Of a stretch of 64,000 bases of DNA, positions 3,026 through 46,700 are shown piece after piece. Position 1 is the stretch's first letter. The number at the start of each line of letters is the position of its first letter. The stretch is from Ostrea edulis. Lineage: Eukaryota. The notes below the pieces were generated by a model that worked only from the letters and a program-made list of their open reading frames with translations, was not told the origin of the DNA and made no database searches. The translations under genes were made by a program, and so were the position numbers. The stretch is from the NCBI RefSeq assembly GCF_947568905.1, contig NC_079168.1, forward strand, positions 30,690,001-30,754,000, given 5' to 3'.

Positions 3026-6000
3026 TAAAGTTTCATGACAGCAAGCTCCAAAGATTTGGACAGGGAAAATTAGAGTCAATACATAAGTCAAATGAATTTT
3101 CCACTTAAGAAAATCTTGCATAATCCTAACAACTCTCCTTTTTGACCTCATAAAATCTTATTGACCTGAGATTATGAATTTACGTAGATTATCTAAATTT
3201 CCTCCTAGTCTTGTGGTCCCCTGCACAATGCATTTCTCAATTCAACATTTTATTTCATTCATAGAGGCTACATATCTAGATCTTGGTTAAAGGAGGGTGG
3301 GGGGCAAGGGTCCCTGACACAAACACCCTGGAGCTTGTAGAAATAAAATAAATATATTTGTTTATTCTTGTGCTCTTGCAATTGTTAAATAAATACTAGG
3401 TATATGTTATTCCTGAGTATATACATTGGGGAAAATTGTATGTGGTGACACATCCTGGAAAAGATTCTCGATTGTGGATTCTCTAATGTATGCACATCTC
3501 TGCTCGCCCTAACGAGAACACTGCCAGCCAACATAATTCTTATAAATAGAAGTCTTTTTCTAATACATTATTGTCTATTCTATGTAATACAAGCAAATGA
3601 AATATACTTTTATCCTCAAAAATATTTTTTTCAAAATGATAACAAAATATTACATTCTCCACATGTAATGAGTTTACAAAATCTATCAAGCTCCTCTATA
3701 CATACAATAATGTACATTAACATCCTGATTTTCATTAAGTTATTGCAGAGATTTTCACACAGTGGTCGTCACAAGTACATTTGTATGTCTAGTTTCCTTA
3801 AATCATAACAGGATTATAATGTACTGAAAGCTTTCAAGACTGGTTGGTACTAATTAGTAGTACCTGTTAGTTGAATTAGACTGGTTCTTGTTTTTGTACA
3901 TTTCTGTTACATCTTCTATGTACATAGACAGGGCTGTCGATCTCCCTAAAACAGGTCCGGAAAAAAGGACCCTTCTCAGTTGGGGAAAAAAGCAATATTT
4001 CCAATTCATAGTCCAGAAATGTGCAATTTTGAGACATTGAAGCAAGAATCATTTCTCAAATGTCTAGACTAAAATTCACTTCAAAATGACGGGTTGGTGG
4101 GGTGAGGGTTACAAAATGAATGTAAATGAGTGAGAGTTTAGCTACTTTGGTTTTTACCTTTAAAGACCGAGAGAGAAAAGCCACTTTATCTGAAACAAAA
4201 ACTTGAATGATTGTGTTTAATTAAAGGATTCCCAATCTGATAAAAAAAAAATGATAAATTTACCCAATCTACCGGGATTGAGACCCTGTCTCAAAAACTG
4301 TAGCGACAGCTTTGATACACTTGCTTCAATAGTCATATGATTTTCTAGTGGTAAGATACTTGACAGCAAAATTGTACATATTTCAACGCAGAAGCTCATA
4401 TTATAGAGTTTATCATTTGTTTTGAAAACAAAGATTGAGGTTTGCTATTGTTTAAGAACTTTTTGAAATAAATGGATGAGTTTATTATATATTACATCTC
4501 AAGTATACATGAGGTGAAATATTTGTGTCATTTAAAAGTCAAAATTTGAGAATCTACACAATGAAGATGCTTTAAATTACAAATTAACATTTGTTTACAT
4601 AAAAAGACACAAGTCTTTGTTTACAAAACACAGAACTATTTTCAAGCTAAAATATTGCTCTTATCCTTGCATCAGAAGGTCCAAATTTTGGTTGTCAACT
4701 TTAAATGAGTTATATTTTTGATTTTTAAAAAGCATGAACCAGTCCCTTTAAAGGAGACAAACCAGTGCCTAAATTTGATGCTTTACTGTGTACTCCTAAA
4801 GTGTTCTTATCAAAATCCAAATTTTGCAGTGATTCCAAAGGCCCGTCGGACATTGGCAAATGTCCGGTAATTTTTGTTTTGGTCCAATCAATATCAGTTG
4901 ATGGCCAGACCAAGTGTCTGATAATTTTTGTTTCCAATGAAATACATGATTAGATAAAATTTCAATTTTTAACAGCATGTACCAAAATCTATTCTGTTCT
5001 TCAGTCATTGTAAACAGAAAACGTGTTTACTTTTAACTCAAATATTTATCAAACTTGCAATCATCTTCAATTCCCCCCCAAGAGGGTGATAATACAATTG
5101 AGCAATATCCCGTAAAGCTACAAACGTCTTTGAAGCGTTCGAATTAGGTAATAAATAACACGTAATAAAACATTTAAACTATACTCTGATCAAGAAGTAC
5201 TTGAACAACATGAACACGTTTGATTGAACAATTTGCATTTGAGTTACGTGAGTTGCTCGAGTTAAAAAAAAAACAACACGTGTATTTCATAACAATGGTG
5301 TTGAACACGAGCTGGAAAAGTTTACTCCACTGACGAATCTGAAGTGAAATGCTTGGGCTAATAAAGTATGTTGCTGATACAATTCTGGGCCAGAAAGTTT
5401 AAATTTACATGAAAGCATCCTGCCATTTTGATAAAATCATGGCCCTCCGGGGATAGGGTAGGGCGACAATAGGGGATGAAAGGTTTACATGGGAATATAT
5501 GGGGAACATCTTTAAAAATCTTCTTCAGAATCTCAAGAACCACTGGGCCAGAAAGTTCAAATTTACATGAAATTTTAAGCTTCCTGATATAGTGTAAATT
5601 CAAGTTTGTGAAAACCATTGCCTCTAAAGGTAGGGGATTATGGGATTAATTTGCATATAAAATTTTGGTCTGGTAAAATGTGATTTGGTCCAGTAATAAA
5701 TCAACCATTACTAGACCAAATGTCCAGTAAGTACCAGAAGACCTTGGGAAGCACTGAATTTTGTAATAGTTTTATTTTGATATTTCAATCAACATTGAGA
5801 TGTGTTCAAGTTATGAACAAAATGAGTATATATCATTCTATTGTCTGGAGTTGACCAAATAGAGAAATGTCTGAATATTAATTATAAGACAAGTTAATCA
5901 TTTCCAACCAGATATTATCACTGTAACAGGTAGCAGTCACCAATTTAAGGGATGATCACACTTGTCGTTGCTTAACCTGCGTGATCAAGAGAGAGACTCT

Positions 6001-7705
6001 ACCACATCACTAGAAAAGCTAGCTCTCTAACAAGGTAGTATAAATTCCCTATGTACCGACCTCTACATTTCCCCTCGCTCAGGGAAGCTTGGTCCCTATA
6101 TATAAGCTTAAGCATGTGTTCTTTCTGAAAGTTTGACACCTCCTCATCAATGGCATCCACCAATCCCAACAACAGCCACTGTCATCCCCAGGCAAAACCA
6201 CGTCTGAACCCAGAACTCTGAAGAAACTCTACCCAAAACTCAACTCCGAAGAAACAGCCTCCCACCAAACATCAGAGTCACTACGCTGCCACCAATTTGT
6301 AACGAGTAGCGGTCACCTATCCAAGTGCTGATCACGCTCGCCATTGCTTAACTTGTGTGATCAAGAGAGACACTCTACCACATCACTAGAAAAGCTTGCT
6401 CTCTGGCGAGATAGTATAAGTTCCCTATATACTGACCGCTACAATCACAACTTGGGATTTTGCTATATGTGATTTAAATCATCCTCACAAGCCAAGTGTC
6501 CAACTTGCTTACTCTAAAATGACAGCAAGCAAATCAGACACTTAATTCACTTACAAAGATGGATATATATAAAATATGTAATTCTAAATTATATATTATG
6601 CGTGTGAGGACCACTTGGAAGAAGTTCAGGGAGCTAGCTGCTACCAGTCCTGACATCACGCCACCTGTCGTATAAGACCCGTGGTCGAGTGTATAACACT
6701 TGCATACGGAGCGCTATGCTCCATGCCAGTGAGACCTGGGCACTGACCAAGCCAAATCTTCATCGCCTACTATGCAACGACAGGGCCATGATAAGACAGA
6801 TCTGTAACATCAAGCCTGAAGATATGGCCACTGTAGGTTCAACTGAATTGCTGGGGCGGCTTGGCATCAATGACCTCGACCTCATCTTATGGGAAAGGAG
6901 ATGCCGCTGGTATGGCCACCTTGTCAGATCCAGCAGTGCAGACAAGTGCGCTCTAAACATACAAGTTCCTGGGAGACGTAGAGTTGGTCGGCCAATGCTA
7001 TCTTGGAGAGAGCTGACGGAGAAAGATCGTAGAGAATGGAAGCTCTCTACTGCCGACCCTCAAGACCGGAAAGAATGGAGATCTGAGGTGAGATCTGCCA
7101 TGCATGCAGCTAGCCAGATACCTGAAAGGGGGCCCACTAGTGTGGACACTACCCATAATTCTGCACGGAAATAAAAAGGAACCGACAACAACAATAAATT
7201 ACATGTATTTTCAATTAAATAATCTAAAGTGAAATAATTATTTACACACTGAAGCAGTTTTGCAGGTTCTAGTCTTAATGGAATGATTTTTTTTAACAGT
7301 CTGAAAAGTCAAAAATACTGTACATCACTAAAAAAAATTATAATTAGACTCCAGTGATCGGTTTTCATTCCATAATACAGAATGCTATTTGCTCGTTAAA
7401 ACTCCTTAATACACTCTATACCTAGATATTTTGTAATAACTGTTTTATCATTTTACAATAAAACGAGCAAACATGAATTCATAATTTTTTAACACATGCA
7501 TTTTTTCAATACTTAAATCAGATAATGACAGATACAACATGTTATGTCTGATGAAGTAGACGTACTGTATGATGTGTAATATGGCCTTGCTGTAGGAAAG
7601 TGAATTCATGCATGACACTACGCTATTGTTAACTAAATGATTTTAAATTCGATGATTGCAGAATATTACCAGCCTGATTTGTGTACTAATCAGAACAAAA
7701 GGCAT
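1438..7705 (-). CDS. GCHFR: GTP cyclohydrolase I feedback regulatory protein; exons complement(7670..7705, 2726..2820, 1438..1579), 90 aa
   Basis: Spliced translation MPFVLISTQIRL/ETGPTVCGDEWSDPELMEHLGAKLTKTLGNNF/QEYISPDPVRIILNKLEKQGYKIQAMTGLGQTCIWTLQKELESQES* matches the GFRP family (human MPYLLISTQIRMEVGPTMVGDE...). All junctions are GT-AG, and the first two coding exons are 36 and 95 nt, as I recall for vertebrate GCHFR. Confidence 0.96.
1750..2080. repeat. Minisatellite, 37-bp unit, about 9 copies (GCHFR intron 2)
   Basis: GAAGAGGAAACTTGGATGTTTAATGGGAAGTAACCTT periodicity (e.g. 1865, 1902, 1939). Confidence 0.9.
2138..2420 (+). mobile_element. SINE-like element with (CAAT)n tail, copy 1
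   Basis: Collinear homolog at 49791..50050. Contains GTCACAGCAGGTGTGGC..GATAAAGATCCC (Meta-SINE-like body) and ends ATATACAATCAATC. Confidence 0.75.
5922..6443 (-). mobile_element. TRIM (miniature non-autonomous LTR retrotransposon) with 5S rRNA-derived LTRs, copy 1
   Basis: 146-bp direct repeats at 6298..6443 and 5922..6067, with TG...CA ends on minus. PBS TGGTGGCAGCG (6284..6294) lies 3 nt after the 5' LTR, PPT GAGCGAGGGGAAA (6068..6080) abuts the 3' LTR, and there is a 5-bp TSD ATCAC (5917-21 / 6444-48). 5S-like segments are at 6309..6362 and 5933..5986. Confidence 0.9.
6600..7175 (+). mobile_element. 5'-truncated RTE/RTEX-type LINE remnant (RT C-terminal region)
   Basis: RVRTTWKKFREL (frameshift) LPVLTSRHLSYKTRGRVYNTCIRSAMLHASETWALT...RRCRWYGHLVRS...GRPMLSWRE is the typical RTE-clade end. 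It is followed by a short (CAA)n/A-rich tail. Confidence 0.85.
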
Positions 7706-43711: not shown

Positions 43712-46700
43712 AATAAGCAATATACATAGCTTATAGTGTAAACAATTTGTAAGGAAGAAATTTTGTCTTGCAAAAAAATTATTTAATCACTTAAATTACA
43801 TACTCATGCCTACTCTTGAGATTAAAAAGTGTTAAGTGTTTGAAATAATTAAATACTGGTGTTAAATTCATGATATTTAATAAAAAAAATAAATTAAAAA
43901 TCCATTGAATTCATTTTGGTGACAAAATGACAGGTGATGGGGCATCATCTTACATTAAAAAATAAAAAATTATACATATACTTGAATTTATAAACTTAGA
44001 AAAACCCACCAACATTTAAACTACATCATCGTCTTTAATTTGATCGGGCGTGGTATACCTTATAATACGTCACAAGCAATGGCGCCGGGAAATAGCGCCG
44101 GATGTATTGGATTTTTCTATGAATTGGCTGTATAACGGTAACAGTACCAATTCAGTGTACCATTTTTTCCAGATAACCATTTCTCAACCCATCTAAGAGG
44201 ATATCCTGTGTATATTATCGCAGTATTGGGTATAGTGTACTTTTTTCTGGGTATAGCACTTTTTTGGGGGTATTGCACAGATTCCAGAATCCGAGGCTGT
44301 TTCACAGCTTTTTTGCAAAGCCTCAGATTTCACAGCTTGTTTGCAACCCCGAGGGTGGAATCACCTTAGTATTTCATGGCAACTCATAAGAGAGTATTTT
44401 TCTCTCATATTTCTAGAAATTTTCTGTTTTCCTTGTGCCTAGCGACGCCATTTTGAGAATTCTCCACATAATTAATTTTTCGCTGTACATTAAAAATAAC
44501 ACCAGAATCGAATTATACGACCTTCATTTTGACAACTATGTTGCTGACAAAATATTGGCCGACGAGTGTATAAGGGAATTGTATTAGTCGAATTATTCCT
44601 CTTTGAATAAGTACACAATAAATCAATAATCAGGGTGATGCATGACGTCACTCGGCAGTCCATCAGCGCGAAACATTTTGACAGACCTAATCAGAATCTG
44701 AATTCACAACTGCACGCTTTCTTAAAGGAGCATTGATATTAATTGAGCAGATATTTAACGGCGAGTGTGTGAAAGAGATTCCAAGTGGTTTTTGTTGGTG
44801 GATATGGGCATGGCCCCGTTTTCCACACGTGCAAGGACTCGAGTCTCATGGACATTGGAGGCACTTGTTTCACCTGAGACACATATAGGGACAGTAGACA
44901 TTGGCAGAGTGAATGTGGAGGTAGGCCTAGAACTAGTAGCCCGTGTGGGCTGGGTTTCTGTGAACTGACATAATGCACCGGATGACATAGATGTACTCGA
45001 CAGCATTTTCGATATGAGGAATTTGTGATTGTTGTTGAGTGTGAGGTAGTTGTTCAAGGAATGTGTATTTTTGTGTCCGGTCATATACATTTAGACATTA
45101 TCAGGGACATTACAATCTGTCATTTTTTGTACAAGAGCTTTGCGGACGCTAGTGAACTTGTCAATCGAGGGAAGTTGCAGGCTAGTTGTGTATTGATTAT
45201 TACGTCATGGGATATGAAAGAAAAATGTCACATGATATTAAAGATAGAAATATCTTTCATACCTTTCTTTCATTGAATATCTGTATCTTACATACGTAGA
45301 TATGAGAGAAAAAAATGTACATATATAATAGTGTGCTTTTATATATCCAGCTCACTAAAATAGTGCAAAACCATGCAAATACAGACAATAGTTCAACCCA
45401 AGGCAATGGATAAAGCTAAAATCTTGCTACATACCAGTGTCGCAGGCAGTATAGAAGGAACTTATCCTGCCTCGCTAGTGAGCTAGCTTCTTTAGTCTCT
45501 TTCTTAATCACGCAAGTTAAGCAACGGGGATCATGATCAACCATTGGATGGGTGACCGCTACACATTGCAAAATGGTGGCAGCGTAGCGACTCTGATGTT
45601 TGGTGGGCTTGCTTCAGGTAGAATCTTTCTGGAGCTCCGTGTCCATGTACAGACATTGTTTTGTCTGGGAACAATGGTGATTGTCTTCGGGAACAGCGAT
45701 GCTGAAGAGGTGCCAAACATTCACAGAAAACTCGCCCTAAGCTTCGGGACGAAGCCTCCCTAAACAGAGGGGAAGTGTAACAGTATAGAGAAAACTTAAA
45801 CTGTCTCCTTAGTGAGCTAGCTTTTCTAGTGATGTGGTAGAGTCTCTCTCTTGATCACACAAGTTAAGCAATGGCGAGCATGATCAGCACTTGGCTGGGT
45901 GACCGCTACTCGTTACACCAGTCTGTATCTTCAGCCGCATGACCAATTTTGAATTTGTGTATCATACATTGCACTGTTCGAAGAAGATGGAGGGAGAGAG
46001 AGCAAGCTATATGTTAATATGCTGCATATTCATGTTATTATATGCTCTATACTTTTAGGTTGATGAATTGTCATTTGAAGAGGGAGATACTCTATATATT
46101 CTTGATATGAGTAACACTGATTGGTGGAAAGCAAAATGTGGAAAGAAAACAGGACTTATTCCCAGTAATTATGGTAAGTGATATATGATGAATTTTAAAT
46201 ATGTGTATATACATGCAAATCAAAAACTGTGATGATCATATGATTTTTATGTTTAAACTGTGTCGTCGGTAAAGCTGTGATGATGATGTAGCCAAGTGAC
46301 AAGACTTTTGTCCGTTTCTTTAATTTATCTTTAGCAGTACAAATCAGTAAACAACAATTATGAATTATGTACAAAGGTAGATCGAATGACGGTTGGTGAT
46401 GTCATAAAGTAACCTAATACATGTAGTTTATTTAAGTAATGTGTGCACACAACCTTTGGTCAAACCACTCAACACTAGAGTCATATGCAGGTATATATAG
46501 TGAGAGCAACACTAAATATAACACATGATACTATTATGTACAATAGTAGCATAAATGTAGCAAATATACATAATATACACACCTGTATAACAGCAAAGGT
46601 TCTTAATAGTATAACATGGTATAAAGAAAAAGGCAGAGTAGCGGTGTGTTCTATGCTGCAGCGTGAAGTAAGAATGACGTCAGCCCTCGTCTGCACTATA

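What the first reader, a model, noticed from the sequence alone, without database searches (positions are those of the whole stretch)
5917..6448. Complete miniature LTR retrotransposon whose LTRs contain a 5S rRNA Pol III promoter (Cassandra/Ajax-like TRIM in a mollusc)
Seen: a 522-bp element on minus with two 146-bp LTRs (TGTAG...TTACA), PBS TGGTGGCAGCG three bases after the 5' LTR, PPT GAGCGAGGGGAAA abutting the 3' LTR, a perfect 5-bp TSD ATCAC and no ORF. Each LTR contains GATCACACAAGTTAAGCAATGGCGAGCGTGATCAGCACTTGGATAGGTGACCGC. Established: this aligns to the internal control region of animal 5S rRNA (GATCACCGAAGTTAAGCAACGTCGAGCCCGGTTAGTACTTGGATGGGTGACCGC; box A, intermediate element, box C), and the PBS is complementary to the tRNA-Leu 3' end (...CGCUGCCACCA). 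As I recall, 5S-bearing TRIMs are known as Cassandra in vascular plants and Ajax in nemerteans. I do not know of one described from oysters, although a bivalve TRIM (biv-TRIM) exists and must be compared. Inference: a non-autonomous LTR element driven by TFIIIA/Pol III and mobilised by a tRNA-Leu-primed autonomous LTR retrotransposon.
Basis: partly seen in the sequence, partly recalled or inferred. Interest (0 to 1): 0.88.

Follow-up and report, generated by a model that had tools for sequence, protein, structure and literature searches.

The report
Oyster mini-retrotransposon with 5S-derived LTRs
This is a real 522-bp non-coding LTR retrotransposon from a family of hundreds of copies in an oyster genome, and the last third of each LTR is copied from the promoter part of the host-type 5S rRNA gene, a design published so far only for plants (Cassandra) and two ribbon worms (Ajax).

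Summary
Window 5922-6443 (minus strand) is a 522-bp element with two 146-nt LTRs (TG..CA, 83.6% identical). It has a PBS, a PPT, a 5-bp TSD and no real ORF.

It is an old copy of a dispersed family. The genome holds 547 LTR-type 5S modules and 75 strict LTR-PBS junctions. LTR pair identity runs from 83.6% to 100%, so the family was active recently.

Rfam/Infernal finds no 5S match in any copy. Direct alignment to the host's own 5S gene gives an ungapped 54-nt match: 5S positions 41-94, 45/54 identical, z=23, 0 of 2000 shuffles. This covers box A, the intermediate element and most of box C.

The PBS complements the last 11 nt of host tRNA-Leu(AAG)+CCA, and 18 nt in one subfamily. The usual family TSD is 4 bp, not 5. 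Many Ty3/gypsy elements in this genome share that PBS, LTR ends in ..CGTTACA and 4-bp TSDs, so they are plausible helpers.

The closest known kind is Ajax. biv-TRIM and Cassandra membership fail. Pol III drive is untested. No searchable paper reports such an element in molluscs.

Verdict: a new member of the 5S-promoter TRIM kind (TRIMp3). Other readers of this scan noted the same family elsewhere in this genome.

The parts
6444..6448 (-). Target-site duplication, upstream copy (GTGAT on the minus strand)
   Evidence: Read directly. It is identical to 5917-5921.
6298..6443 (-). 5' LTR, 146 nt, TGTAG...GTTACA
   Evidence: the repeat finder family D1. It is 90.5% identical to the LTR of the young copy L002.
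6425..6431 (-). TATA-like motif (TATATAG here; TATAAG, within GTATAAGAGGG, in most copies) at LTR positions 13-19. This is about 30 nt upstream of the position that corresponds to 5S +1.
   Evidence: A TATA-like motif is present in 44 of 60 LTRs. The spacing is derived from the 5S alignment.
6390..6393 (-). TTTT run at LTR positions 51-54, the only T>=4 run conserved in the family. It corresponds to 5S +10..+13.
   Evidence: Present in 25 of 30 5' LTRs and 28 of 30 3' LTRs. Young copies have no other T4 run and no T5 run.
6309..6362 (-). 5S rRNA-derived module (host 5S positions 41-94: box A, intermediate element, box C as far as position 94)
   Evidence: Ungapped 54-nt local alignment to the host 5S gene, 45/54 identical, z=23.3, 0 of 2000 dinucleotide shuffles reach the score. 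There is no Rfam hit.
6284..6294 (-). Primer-binding site TGGTGGCAGCG, 3 nt after the 5' LTR
   Evidence: It is complementary to the 3' end, plus CCA, of host tRNA-Leu(AAG) genes. It is conserved across copies.
6068..6297 (-). Internal domain, 230 nt, non-coding. It includes the PBS at its 5' end and the PPT at its 3' end.
   Evidence: Homologous internal domains occur in 29 other copies.
6068..6080 (-). Polypurine tract GAGCGAGGGGAAA abutting the 3' LTR
   Evidence: Read directly. A G-rich tract ending ..GGGGGAAG sits next to TGTAG in the other copies.
5922..6067 (-). 3' LTR, 146 nt. Its 5S module (5986..5933) has decayed to 38/54 identity with 5S.
5917..5921 (-). Target-site duplication, downstream copy (GTGAT on the minus strand)
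45434..45921 (+). Second, independent copy of the same family in the window. The element spans 45438-45917 and has a 4-bp TSD, CCAG.
   Evidence: blastn of the LTR against the window. Junctions, PBS and PPT were read.

Best explanation
The element is a decayed old copy of a non-autonomous LTR retrotransposon of the TRIM class. It belongs to the subtype whose LTR carries a fragment of a small-RNA gene (Kojima's TRIMp3, the subtype that holds Cassandra and Ajax). The last third of each 147-nt LTR derives from 5S rRNA gene positions 41-94, which is the internal control region that recruits TFIIIA, TFIIIC and Pol III in true 5S genes.

Shown: the LTR/PBS/PPT/TSD anatomy, the 5S homology, the fit of the PBS to host tRNA-Leu(AAG), the family's copy number and recent activity, and the presence of many Ty3/gypsy elements with the same primer, the same LTR ends (..CGTTACA) and 4-bp TSDs.

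Inferred: the element is copied by the usual LTR route. tRNA-Leu primes the minus strand at the PBS, the PPT primes the plus strand, and an integrase makes a 4-bp staggered cut, occasionally 5 bp. Gag, RT and integrase are supplied in trans by one of those Ty3/gypsy elements.

Inferred with less certainty (about 0.45): the genomic RNA is made by Pol III from the 5S-derived promoter and starts near LTR position 43, the equivalent of 5S +1. A conserved TATA-like motif lies 30 nt upstream of that position. The only conserved T4 run (+10..+13) would be read through. Young copies contain no T5 run, and the host Pol III genes examined end in T5-T8.
For: Anatomy.

Family: 29 further full-length copies of about 500 bp; 547 LTR-type module 30-mers and 75 exact boxC-LTR end-PBS junctions against 0 in the controls; LTR pair identity up to 100% in L002 and L005.

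5S homology: 54 nt ungapped, 45/54 identical in the window copy and 46/54 in L002, z=23-25. The host 5S gene was confirmed at 118.8 bits for RF00001. The box A to box C spacing is 18 nt, as in 5S and Cassandra.

PBS: at least 19 host tRNA-Leu(AAG) genes end ..CCCACCGCTGCCA. The subfamily L055/L065 carries the full 18-nt PBS.

Helpers: the 18-nt tRNA-Leu PBS occurs at 271 sites against 0 in the control. L077, L080 and L081 encode gag-PR-RT-RNaseH-IN. LTR ends ..CGTTACA occur in 14 of 28 non-TRIM loci. L078 has the 4-bp TSD GTTG and L081 has ATAC.

Pol III plausibility: TATA-like motif in 44 of 60 LTRs; no T5 run in young copies; host 5S and tRNA-Leu terminators are T5 or longer, and two of the seven host tRNA-Leu gene contexts examined carry an internal T4 run; the L002 LTR sequence printed has no AATAAA or ATTAAA (read by eye).
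Against: Infernal/Rfam gives no 5S hit at E<=10 for the window copy or for 19 other copies. The module is therefore a promoter-sized fragment and not a 5S gene.

The intermediate element differs from host 5S at positions 68 and 71. TFIIIA binding is therefore not assured.

A T4 run lies only about 9 nt downstream of the predicted Pol III start. A well-placed TATA box fits Pol II equally well.

Within the family the 5S module is no better conserved than the rest of the LTR (p=0.39). This is uninformative, but it gives no support for selection.

The lack of T runs is not statistically significant for about 500 nt at 26% T (my estimate from the composition).

No sequence similarity beyond the PBS links the TRIM to any specific autonomous element.

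The RNA-like contigs show the element inside longer contigs and give no start sites.
Confidence: 0.78

Rival explanations
1. An ordinary Pol II-driven TRIM. The TATA-like box in U3 sets a Pol II start near LTR position 43. The 5S fragment is then a passenger, for example a relic of a 5S-derived SINE insertion or of template switching onto 5S RNA, and has no promoter role.
For: The TATA-like motif at -30 is conserved in 44 of 60 LTRs. A T4 run lies 9 nt after the predicted Pol III start. The intermediate element is altered at two positions. The module shows no excess conservation. Family members occur inside longer RNA-like contigs.
Against: The retained fragment coincides with the full minimal internal control region, with the exact 18-nt box A to box C spacing. 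The same promoter-only fragment sits in the same place in Ajax LTRs. The LTR has no canonical poly(A) hexamer (sequence printed, read by eye). Young copies have no T5 run over 502 nt.
Confidence: 0.4
2. The 5S likeness arose by chance or is low-complexity similarity, so the element is a plain TRIM with no link to 5S.
For: Rfam/Infernal reports no 5S match in 20 copies.
Against: The ungapped 54-nt alignment to the host 5S gene has z=23-25, and 0 of 2000 dinucleotide shuffles reach its score. The reverse-complement control scores at most 20, against 57.6 on average for the forward strand. The match carries mollusc-type 5S features such as GATCAC and GGTGACC.
Confidence: 0.02
3. It is a member of the described bivalve family biv-TRIM, or of another catalogued oyster repeat, and so is already known under another name.
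For: biv-TRIM is reported from several bivalves, including Magallana gigas. Repbase and Dfam could not be searched here.
Against: biv-TRIM has 202-218-bp terminal repeats, a 77-80-bp internal domain, no canonical PBS and a conserved core TGATCCCAAAGGAC, and it was not detected in Ostrea edulis. That core is absent from all 30 copies at up to 3 mismatches. Reviews and papers up to 2026 list Ajax in nemerteans as the only animal 5S-LTR TRIM.
Confidence: 0.12

Closest known systems
Ajax (Ajax-1_NGe, Ajax-1_LiLo; Kojima 2024, PMC10886601)
   Same: Both are TRIMs of about 420-520 bp with LTRs of about 150 nt. The LTR 3' part is a promoter-only 5S fragment (box A, intermediate element, box C) that ends at 5S position 93/94, 11-16 nt before the LTR terminus ..ACA. 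Both have a PBS assigned to tRNA-Leu(AAG) and a G-rich PPT. Four of the five family-ancestral differences of the oyster module from host 5S recur in one or both Ajax modules: 68 and 73 in both, 71 in NGe, 76 in LiLo. The chance of 3 or more identical shared changes is about 0.005 under a uniform model. That chance is higher if changes cluster in the unconstrained spacer.
   Different: The host phylum is Mollusca rather than Nemertea. The family TSD is 4 bp rather than 5 bp. The internal domain is about 208-230 nt rather than 108-113 nt. The PBS is 11-18 nt and includes the CCA complement, against a 6-nt match in Ajax. The oyster module keeps more 5S sequence on its 5' side (from position 41 rather than about 49). 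It is closer to oyster 5S (40/46) than to Ajax (36-37/46). Whole-LTR homology to Ajax was not tested with a tool.
Cassandra (plant TRIM; Kalendar et al. 2008, 2020)
   Same: It is a TRIM with 5S-derived sequence in both LTRs. Box A and box C are separated by 18 nt.
   Different: Cassandra carries a near-complete 5S domain with terminators, uses the PBS TGGTATCAGAGC, and is restricted to vascular plants. Its strict motif is met by 0 of 60 LTRs here and its PBS by 0 of 30 copies.
biv-TRIM (Satovic et al. 2019, PMC6934838)
   Same: It is a bivalve TRIM with a short G-rich PPT and interspersed copies.
   Different: It has terminal repeats of 202-218 bp and an internal domain of 77-80 bp, no canonical PBS, and no 5S content reported. 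Its conserved core is absent here.
SINE3 and other 5S-derived SINEs
   Same: They use the 5S internal control region as a mobile-element promoter.
   Different: SINEs are mobilised by LINEs and have no LTRs, PBS or PPT. No 5S-derived SINE is reported for molluscs in the papers searched.

Membership tests
TRIM (terminal-repeat retrotransposon in miniature) | Total length under about 1 kb with two direct terminal repeats of about 100-250 bp ending TG..CA | tested here: met
   522 bp with 146-nt LTRs, TGTAG..GTTACA. Other copies are 488-538 bp.
TRIM (terminal-repeat retrotransposon in miniature) | PBS next to the 5' LTR and PPT next to the 3' LTR | tested here: met
   The PBS matches host tRNA-Leu(AAG)+CCA.
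TRIM (terminal-repeat retrotransposon in miniature) | Target-site duplication and no coding capacity | tested here: met
   TSD statistics. The longest ORF is 57 aa.
[quoted passage not shown] | [quoted passage not shown] | tested here: met
   5S positions 41-94, z=23.
[quoted passage not shown] | Transcription by RNA polymerase III from that promoter | not testable with these tools
   Only assembled contigs were available, with no start sites.
Ajax | A partial 5S fragment (box A, intermediate element, box C only) in the LTR | tested here: met
   with the Ajax description.
Ajax | PBS complementary to tRNA-Leu | tested here: met
Ajax | 5-bp TSD | tested here: not met
   The family mode is 4 bp (13 perfect 4-bp against 2 perfect 5-bp). 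The window copy itself has 5 bp.
Ajax | Sequence homology to the Ajax-1 LTR and internal domain outside the 5S module | not tested
Only the 46-nt modules were compared.
Cassandra | Box A RGTTAAGYRHGY, 18 nt, box C RRRATRGGTRACY | tested here: not met
   0 of 60 LTRs match strictly; 40 of 60 match with up to 2 substitutions per box. The host 5S gene also fails the strict, plant-specific motif.
Cassandra | PBS TGGTATCAGAGC | tested here: not met
   0 of 30 copies.
biv-TRIM | Terminal repeats of 202-218 bp, internal domain of 77-80 bp, conserved core TGATCCCAAAGGAC | tested here: not met
   The LTR is 146-147 nt and the internal domain 208-230 nt. The core is absent at up to 3 mismatches in 30 copies.
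5S rRNA gene or pseudogene (RF00001) | A covariance-model match to the whole 5S structure | tested here: not met
   No hit at E<=10, while true host 5S genes score 113-119 bits.

The most novel reading that the evidence does not exclude
The oyster family and nemertean Ajax descend from one ancient lophotrochozoan 5S-LTR lineage, or from one 5S-derived SINE head. The clues are the same truncation point and shared derived bases. On this reading the family replicates through a Pol III genomic RNA. That RNA would start about 30 nt after a TATA-like box, read through a promoter-proximal T4 run, and possibly use the same T4 run in the 3' LTR to define a very short R region of 10-13 nt. It would also contain a remodelled 8-bp hairpin that encloses box A.
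Probability: 0.2. Interest if true: 0.65.

Novelty: new member of a known kind. Interest (0 to 1): 0.5.

Why it matters
LTR retrotransposons that borrow a Pol III promoter are rare. Cassandra in plants is the only experimentally supported case, and Ajax is known from two ribbon worms.

A recently active family of hundreds of copies in an oyster extends the type to a third major group. Oysters are commercially important and genetically tractable.

The family gives young copies with identical LTRs on which Pol III dependence, the size of R and the helper element can be tested. It also raises the question of whether the Ajax type is old in Lophotrochozoa or arose repeatedly.

In practice, these LTRs are a source of 5S-like sequences that can confuse rDNA and small-RNA annotation in bivalve genomes.

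Tried and rejected
1. Rfam cmscan on the window copy, on its 5' LTR alone and on 19 other copies found no 5S hit. Infernal cannot see this half-gene fragment, so direct alignment was used instead.

2. The within-family conservation profile is flat (p=0.39). It is uninformative because copies decay neutrally after insertion.

3. T-run depletion as a Pol III signature: young copies have no T5 run and only the LTR T4 run. The expected count in 500 nt is only about 0.4-1.2, so this is not significant.

4. blastn of a young copy against 35 loci that carry the tRNA-Leu PBS found only TRIM relatives (L055, L065) and no specific autonomous partner.

5. Laying contigs of four possibly-RNA runs from two other coded organisms showed family members at 85-99% likeness. 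They lie within longer contigs, and no transcript starts, ends or strand could be read.

6. biv-TRIM and Cassandra membership were tested and rejected.

7. A whole-LTR alignment to the published Ajax sequences was left out, because it would have required typing long strings. Only the 46-nt modules were compared.

8. All comparisons are between individual copies.
Full report
**Observation**

The stretch 5917-6448, read on the minus strand, contains the following, in order:
- GTGAT;
- a 146-nt repeat running TGTAG...GTTACA (6443..6298);
- the spacer AAT;
- TGGTGGCAGCG (6294..6284);
- a non-coding internal domain;
- GAGCGAGGGGAAA (6080..6068);
- the second 146-nt repeat (6067..5922);
- GTGAT again.

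The repeat finder reports the two repeats as one family at 84% identity, and a global alignment gives 122/146 identical positions. The longest mechanical ORF overlapping the element is 57 aa.

Two details need correcting. The quoted 54-nt string is exact only in the 5' LTR, because the 3' LTR version has decayed. The 5-bp TSD is unusual for the family, as shown below.

**A dispersed family, recently active**

A search of the window's own genome (894.8 Mb) gave 29 further full-length matches of about 500 bp on all ten large contigs. The genome is an oyster's: runs labelled 'oyster metagenome' hold the sequence.

In a MAFFT alignment of these individual copies every feature recurs:
- LTRs of 147 nt that start TGTAGCGG and end ACGTTACA;
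- the spacer AAT followed by TGGTGGCAGCG;
- a G-rich tract ending GGGGGAAG directly before the 3' LTR.

Strict pattern counts give 75 exact junctions of box C, LTR end and PBS, and 547 LTR-type module 30-mers at up to 3 mismatches. The reversed-pattern controls give 0 in both cases.

LTR pair identity ranges from 83.6% to 100%. The window copy is the lowest, and so the oldest, of the 30. L002 and L005 reach 100% and L003 reaches 99.3%. The family has therefore transposed over a long period and very recently.

A second copy lies in the same window at 45438-45917 on the plus strand, with the TSD CCAG.

**Target-site duplication**

Of 26 copies with intact TG..CA ends, 13 have a perfect 4-bp TSD. 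Two have a perfect 5-bp TSD (the window copy and L006), and six match at 3 of 4 positions. A shifted-flank control gives one match. The three youngest copies all have 4 bp. The family mode is therefore 4 bp, unlike the 5 bp reported for Ajax.

**The 5S question**

Rfam/Infernal found no 5S match at E<=10 in any of three searches:
- the 2.5 kb around the element;
- the 5' LTR alone;
- 19 other copies, which together hold 38 LTRs.

I then took one of the host's true 5S genes (118.8 bits for RF00001) and aligned it locally to the LTRs. The 5' LTR of the window copy matches 5S positions 41-94 without a gap, with 45 of 54 bases identical. The z-score is 23.3 against dinucleotide shuffles, and 0 of 2000 shuffles reach the score. 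The young copy L002 has 46 of 54 identical, with z=24-25. Across 60 LTRs the mean score is 57.6, against 14.6 for the reverse-complement control.

The homology is therefore real. Infernal misses it because only half the gene is present and the 5S helices are gone. No similarity was detected upstream of position 41.

The retained part covers box A (50-64), the intermediate element (67-72) and box C up to position 94. These box positions come from the established description of the Xenopus 5S internal control region. The box A to box C spacing is the 18 nt used to define Cassandra. The match shows mollusc-type 5S letters, such as GATCAC and GGTGACC.

**Primer**

The host has at least 19 identical tRNA-Leu(AAG) genes that end ..CCCACCGCTGCCA. 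After CCA addition, the last 11 nt are the exact complement of the PBS. Two relatives, L055 and L065, carry the full 18-nt complement.

**Possible helpers**

The 18-nt tRNA-Leu PBS occurs at 271 places in the genome, against 0 in the control. Of 30 loci examined, 28 are not TRIMs. In 14 of those the LTR ends ..CGTTACA and is followed by a short A/T spacer, as in the TRIM.

Four elements were fetched in full. They have LTR pairs that are 97-99% identical. In the three whose ORFs were scanned (L077, L080, L081), the ORFs carry gag, aspartic protease, RT, RNase H and integrase domains in the Ty3/gypsy order. L078 has the 4-bp TSD GTTG and L081 has ATAC.

The genome therefore contains an abundant, partly young clade of Ty3/gypsy elements with the same primer, the same LTR terminus and the same TSD length. 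No sequence similarity beyond the PBS ties the TRIM to a particular one.

**How it is transcribed (inference)**

If the 5S-derived region works as in a 5S gene, the start would fall at the equivalent of 5S +1, which is LTR position 43. Several observations bear on this.
- A TATA-like motif lies 30 nt upstream in 44 of 60 LTRs (TATAAG, within GTATAAGAGGG; TATATAG in the window copy).
- The only T>=4 run conserved in the family is TTTT at LTR 52-55, which corresponds to +10..+13. Young copies have no other T4 run and no T5 run over their 502 nt.
- The host's 5S gene and seven tRNA-Leu gene contexts end in T5-T8, and two of the seven carry an internal T4 run. T4 may therefore be a weak terminator in this organism.
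- The LTR has no AATAAA or ATTAAA (sequence printed, read by eye).
- The LTR RNA folds more stably than shuffles (z=-4.5). One hairpin spans the predicted start and the T run.

All of this is compatible with a Pol III genomic RNA, but none of it proves one. The T-run absence is not statistically significant, and the TATA box fits Pol II equally well. The intermediate element differs from host 5S at positions 68 and 71. I put Pol III drive at about 0.45.

**A remodelled module**

Seven differences from host 5S are ancestral to the family: positions 47 and 48 and positions 62, 68, 71, 73 and 76. Five of them (47, 48, 68, 71, 73) turn a partly complementary pair of segments into a perfect 8-bp inverted repeat, GATCACGC...GCGTGATC, whose 17-nt loop lies within box A. 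In host 5S the same segments form 3 Watson-Crick pairs, 2 G-T pairs and 3 mismatches.

Of 54 LTRs, 20 keep all eight pairs. Mononucleotide shuffles of the module contain such a stem in 0.9% of cases. The meaning of this stem is unknown.

**Comparison with known families**

- **biv-TRIM.** It has repeats of 202-218 bp, an internal domain of 77-80 bp and no canonical PBS. PCR did not detect it in Ostrea edulis. Its conserved core is absent from all 30 copies. The element is not a member.
- **Cassandra.** Its strict motif and its PBS are not met. The element is not a member, although the design is analogous.
- **Ajax.** It is the closest known family, with the following properties:
  - LTRs of 154-163 nt;
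  - a promoter-only 5S fragment that ends at 5S position 93/94, 11-16 nt before the LTR end;
  - a tRNA-Leu PBS;
  - a G-rich PPT.

Comparing the 46-nt modules shows shared changes with Ajax. Of the oyster family's five ancestral changes in this stretch, 68 and 73 recur in both Ajax families, 71 recurs in NGe and 76 recurs in LiLo. The chance of three or more identical shared changes is about 0.005 under a uniform model. It is appreciably higher if changes cluster in the unconstrained spacer.

The oyster module is nevertheless closer to oyster 5S (40/46) than to Ajax (36-37/46). Common descent and independent capture both remain open.

The element differs from Ajax in TSD length, in internal domain length, in the extent of the PBS and in host phylum.

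**Literature**

Kojima (2024) screened only two nemerteans for Ajax. A 2024 review lists Ajax as the only animal 5S-LTR TRIM. Full-text searches for TRIMp3, Ajax/Cassandra, SINE3 with oyster, and 5S/LTR/oyster/TRIM found no mollusc report up to late 2026. Repbase and Dfam could not be queried.

**Other organisms**

Contigs of four runs from two other coded organisms hold family members at 85-99% likeness, but not the flanks of L002. The family is therefore not confined to this assembly. The data are contigs and say nothing about transcript ends.

**Earlier notes of this scan**

Other first readers flagged the same family elsewhere in this genome: s1-271427 (with a 4-bp TSD) and s1-287395. The second copy in this window is s1-301944. 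I confirmed the 4-bp TSD and the second copy independently.

**Verdict**

This is a real, well-formed TRIM of the 5S-promoter type and a new member of a known kind, in a phylum where none has been published. Its transcription mechanism is still to be shown.

Noticed in passing
window 45434-45921 (+): A second independent copy of the same TRIM family lies here. Its LTRs are at 45438-45570 and 45780-45917, its PBS is TGGTGGCAGCG after the spacer AAA, and its TSD is the 4-bp CCAG.
   Followed up: yes
L002:1585-1617 (LTR positions 83-115); equivalent in window 6361..6329: Five of the seven ancestral differences of the module from host 5S create a perfect 8-bp inverted repeat, GATCACGC/GCGTGATC, that encloses box A. 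Shuffles of the module show such a stem in 0.9% of cases. Its function is unknown.
   Followed up: partly
G000, 271 sites; loci L047-L081: The 18-nt PBS for tRNA-Leu(AAG) marks a large and diverse set of Ty3/gypsy elements. Several have LTR pairs 97-99% identical, and L080 has a long open gag-pol frame of 1613 aa.
   Followed up: partly
L055:1379-1801 and L065:86-1746: These are TRIM relatives with the full 18-nt tRNA-Leu PBS and a somewhat different internal domain (74-81% identity to L002). They form a separate subfamily.
   Followed up: partly
L027:1207-2016: Three LTRs lie in the same orientation: one LTR, a gap of about 140 nt, then LTR-internal-LTR. This may be a nested or partly tandem arrangement, as described for Cassandra and biv-TRIM.
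   Followed up: no
L002:2418-2538; L016:1265-1367; L007:812-884: Long perfect hairpins next to TRIM copies score against miRNA families below their gathering cut-offs (mir-5014 at 78.6 bits, MIR2084 at 47 bits on both strands, mir-218 at 36 bits). They are most likely foldback or MITE repeats rather than miRNA genes.
   Followed up: no
L043 and L046 (G000:C2:28.41-28.42 Mb): This is a cluster of tRNA-Leu genes. Some members carry an internal TTTT run, and all end in T5-T6. This suggests that T4 is not an efficient Pol III terminator in this species.
   Followed up: partly
L002:2008-2049: The right flank of the young copy has very high contig depth in runs of another organism. It is therefore another repeat abutting the insertion.
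   Followed up: no
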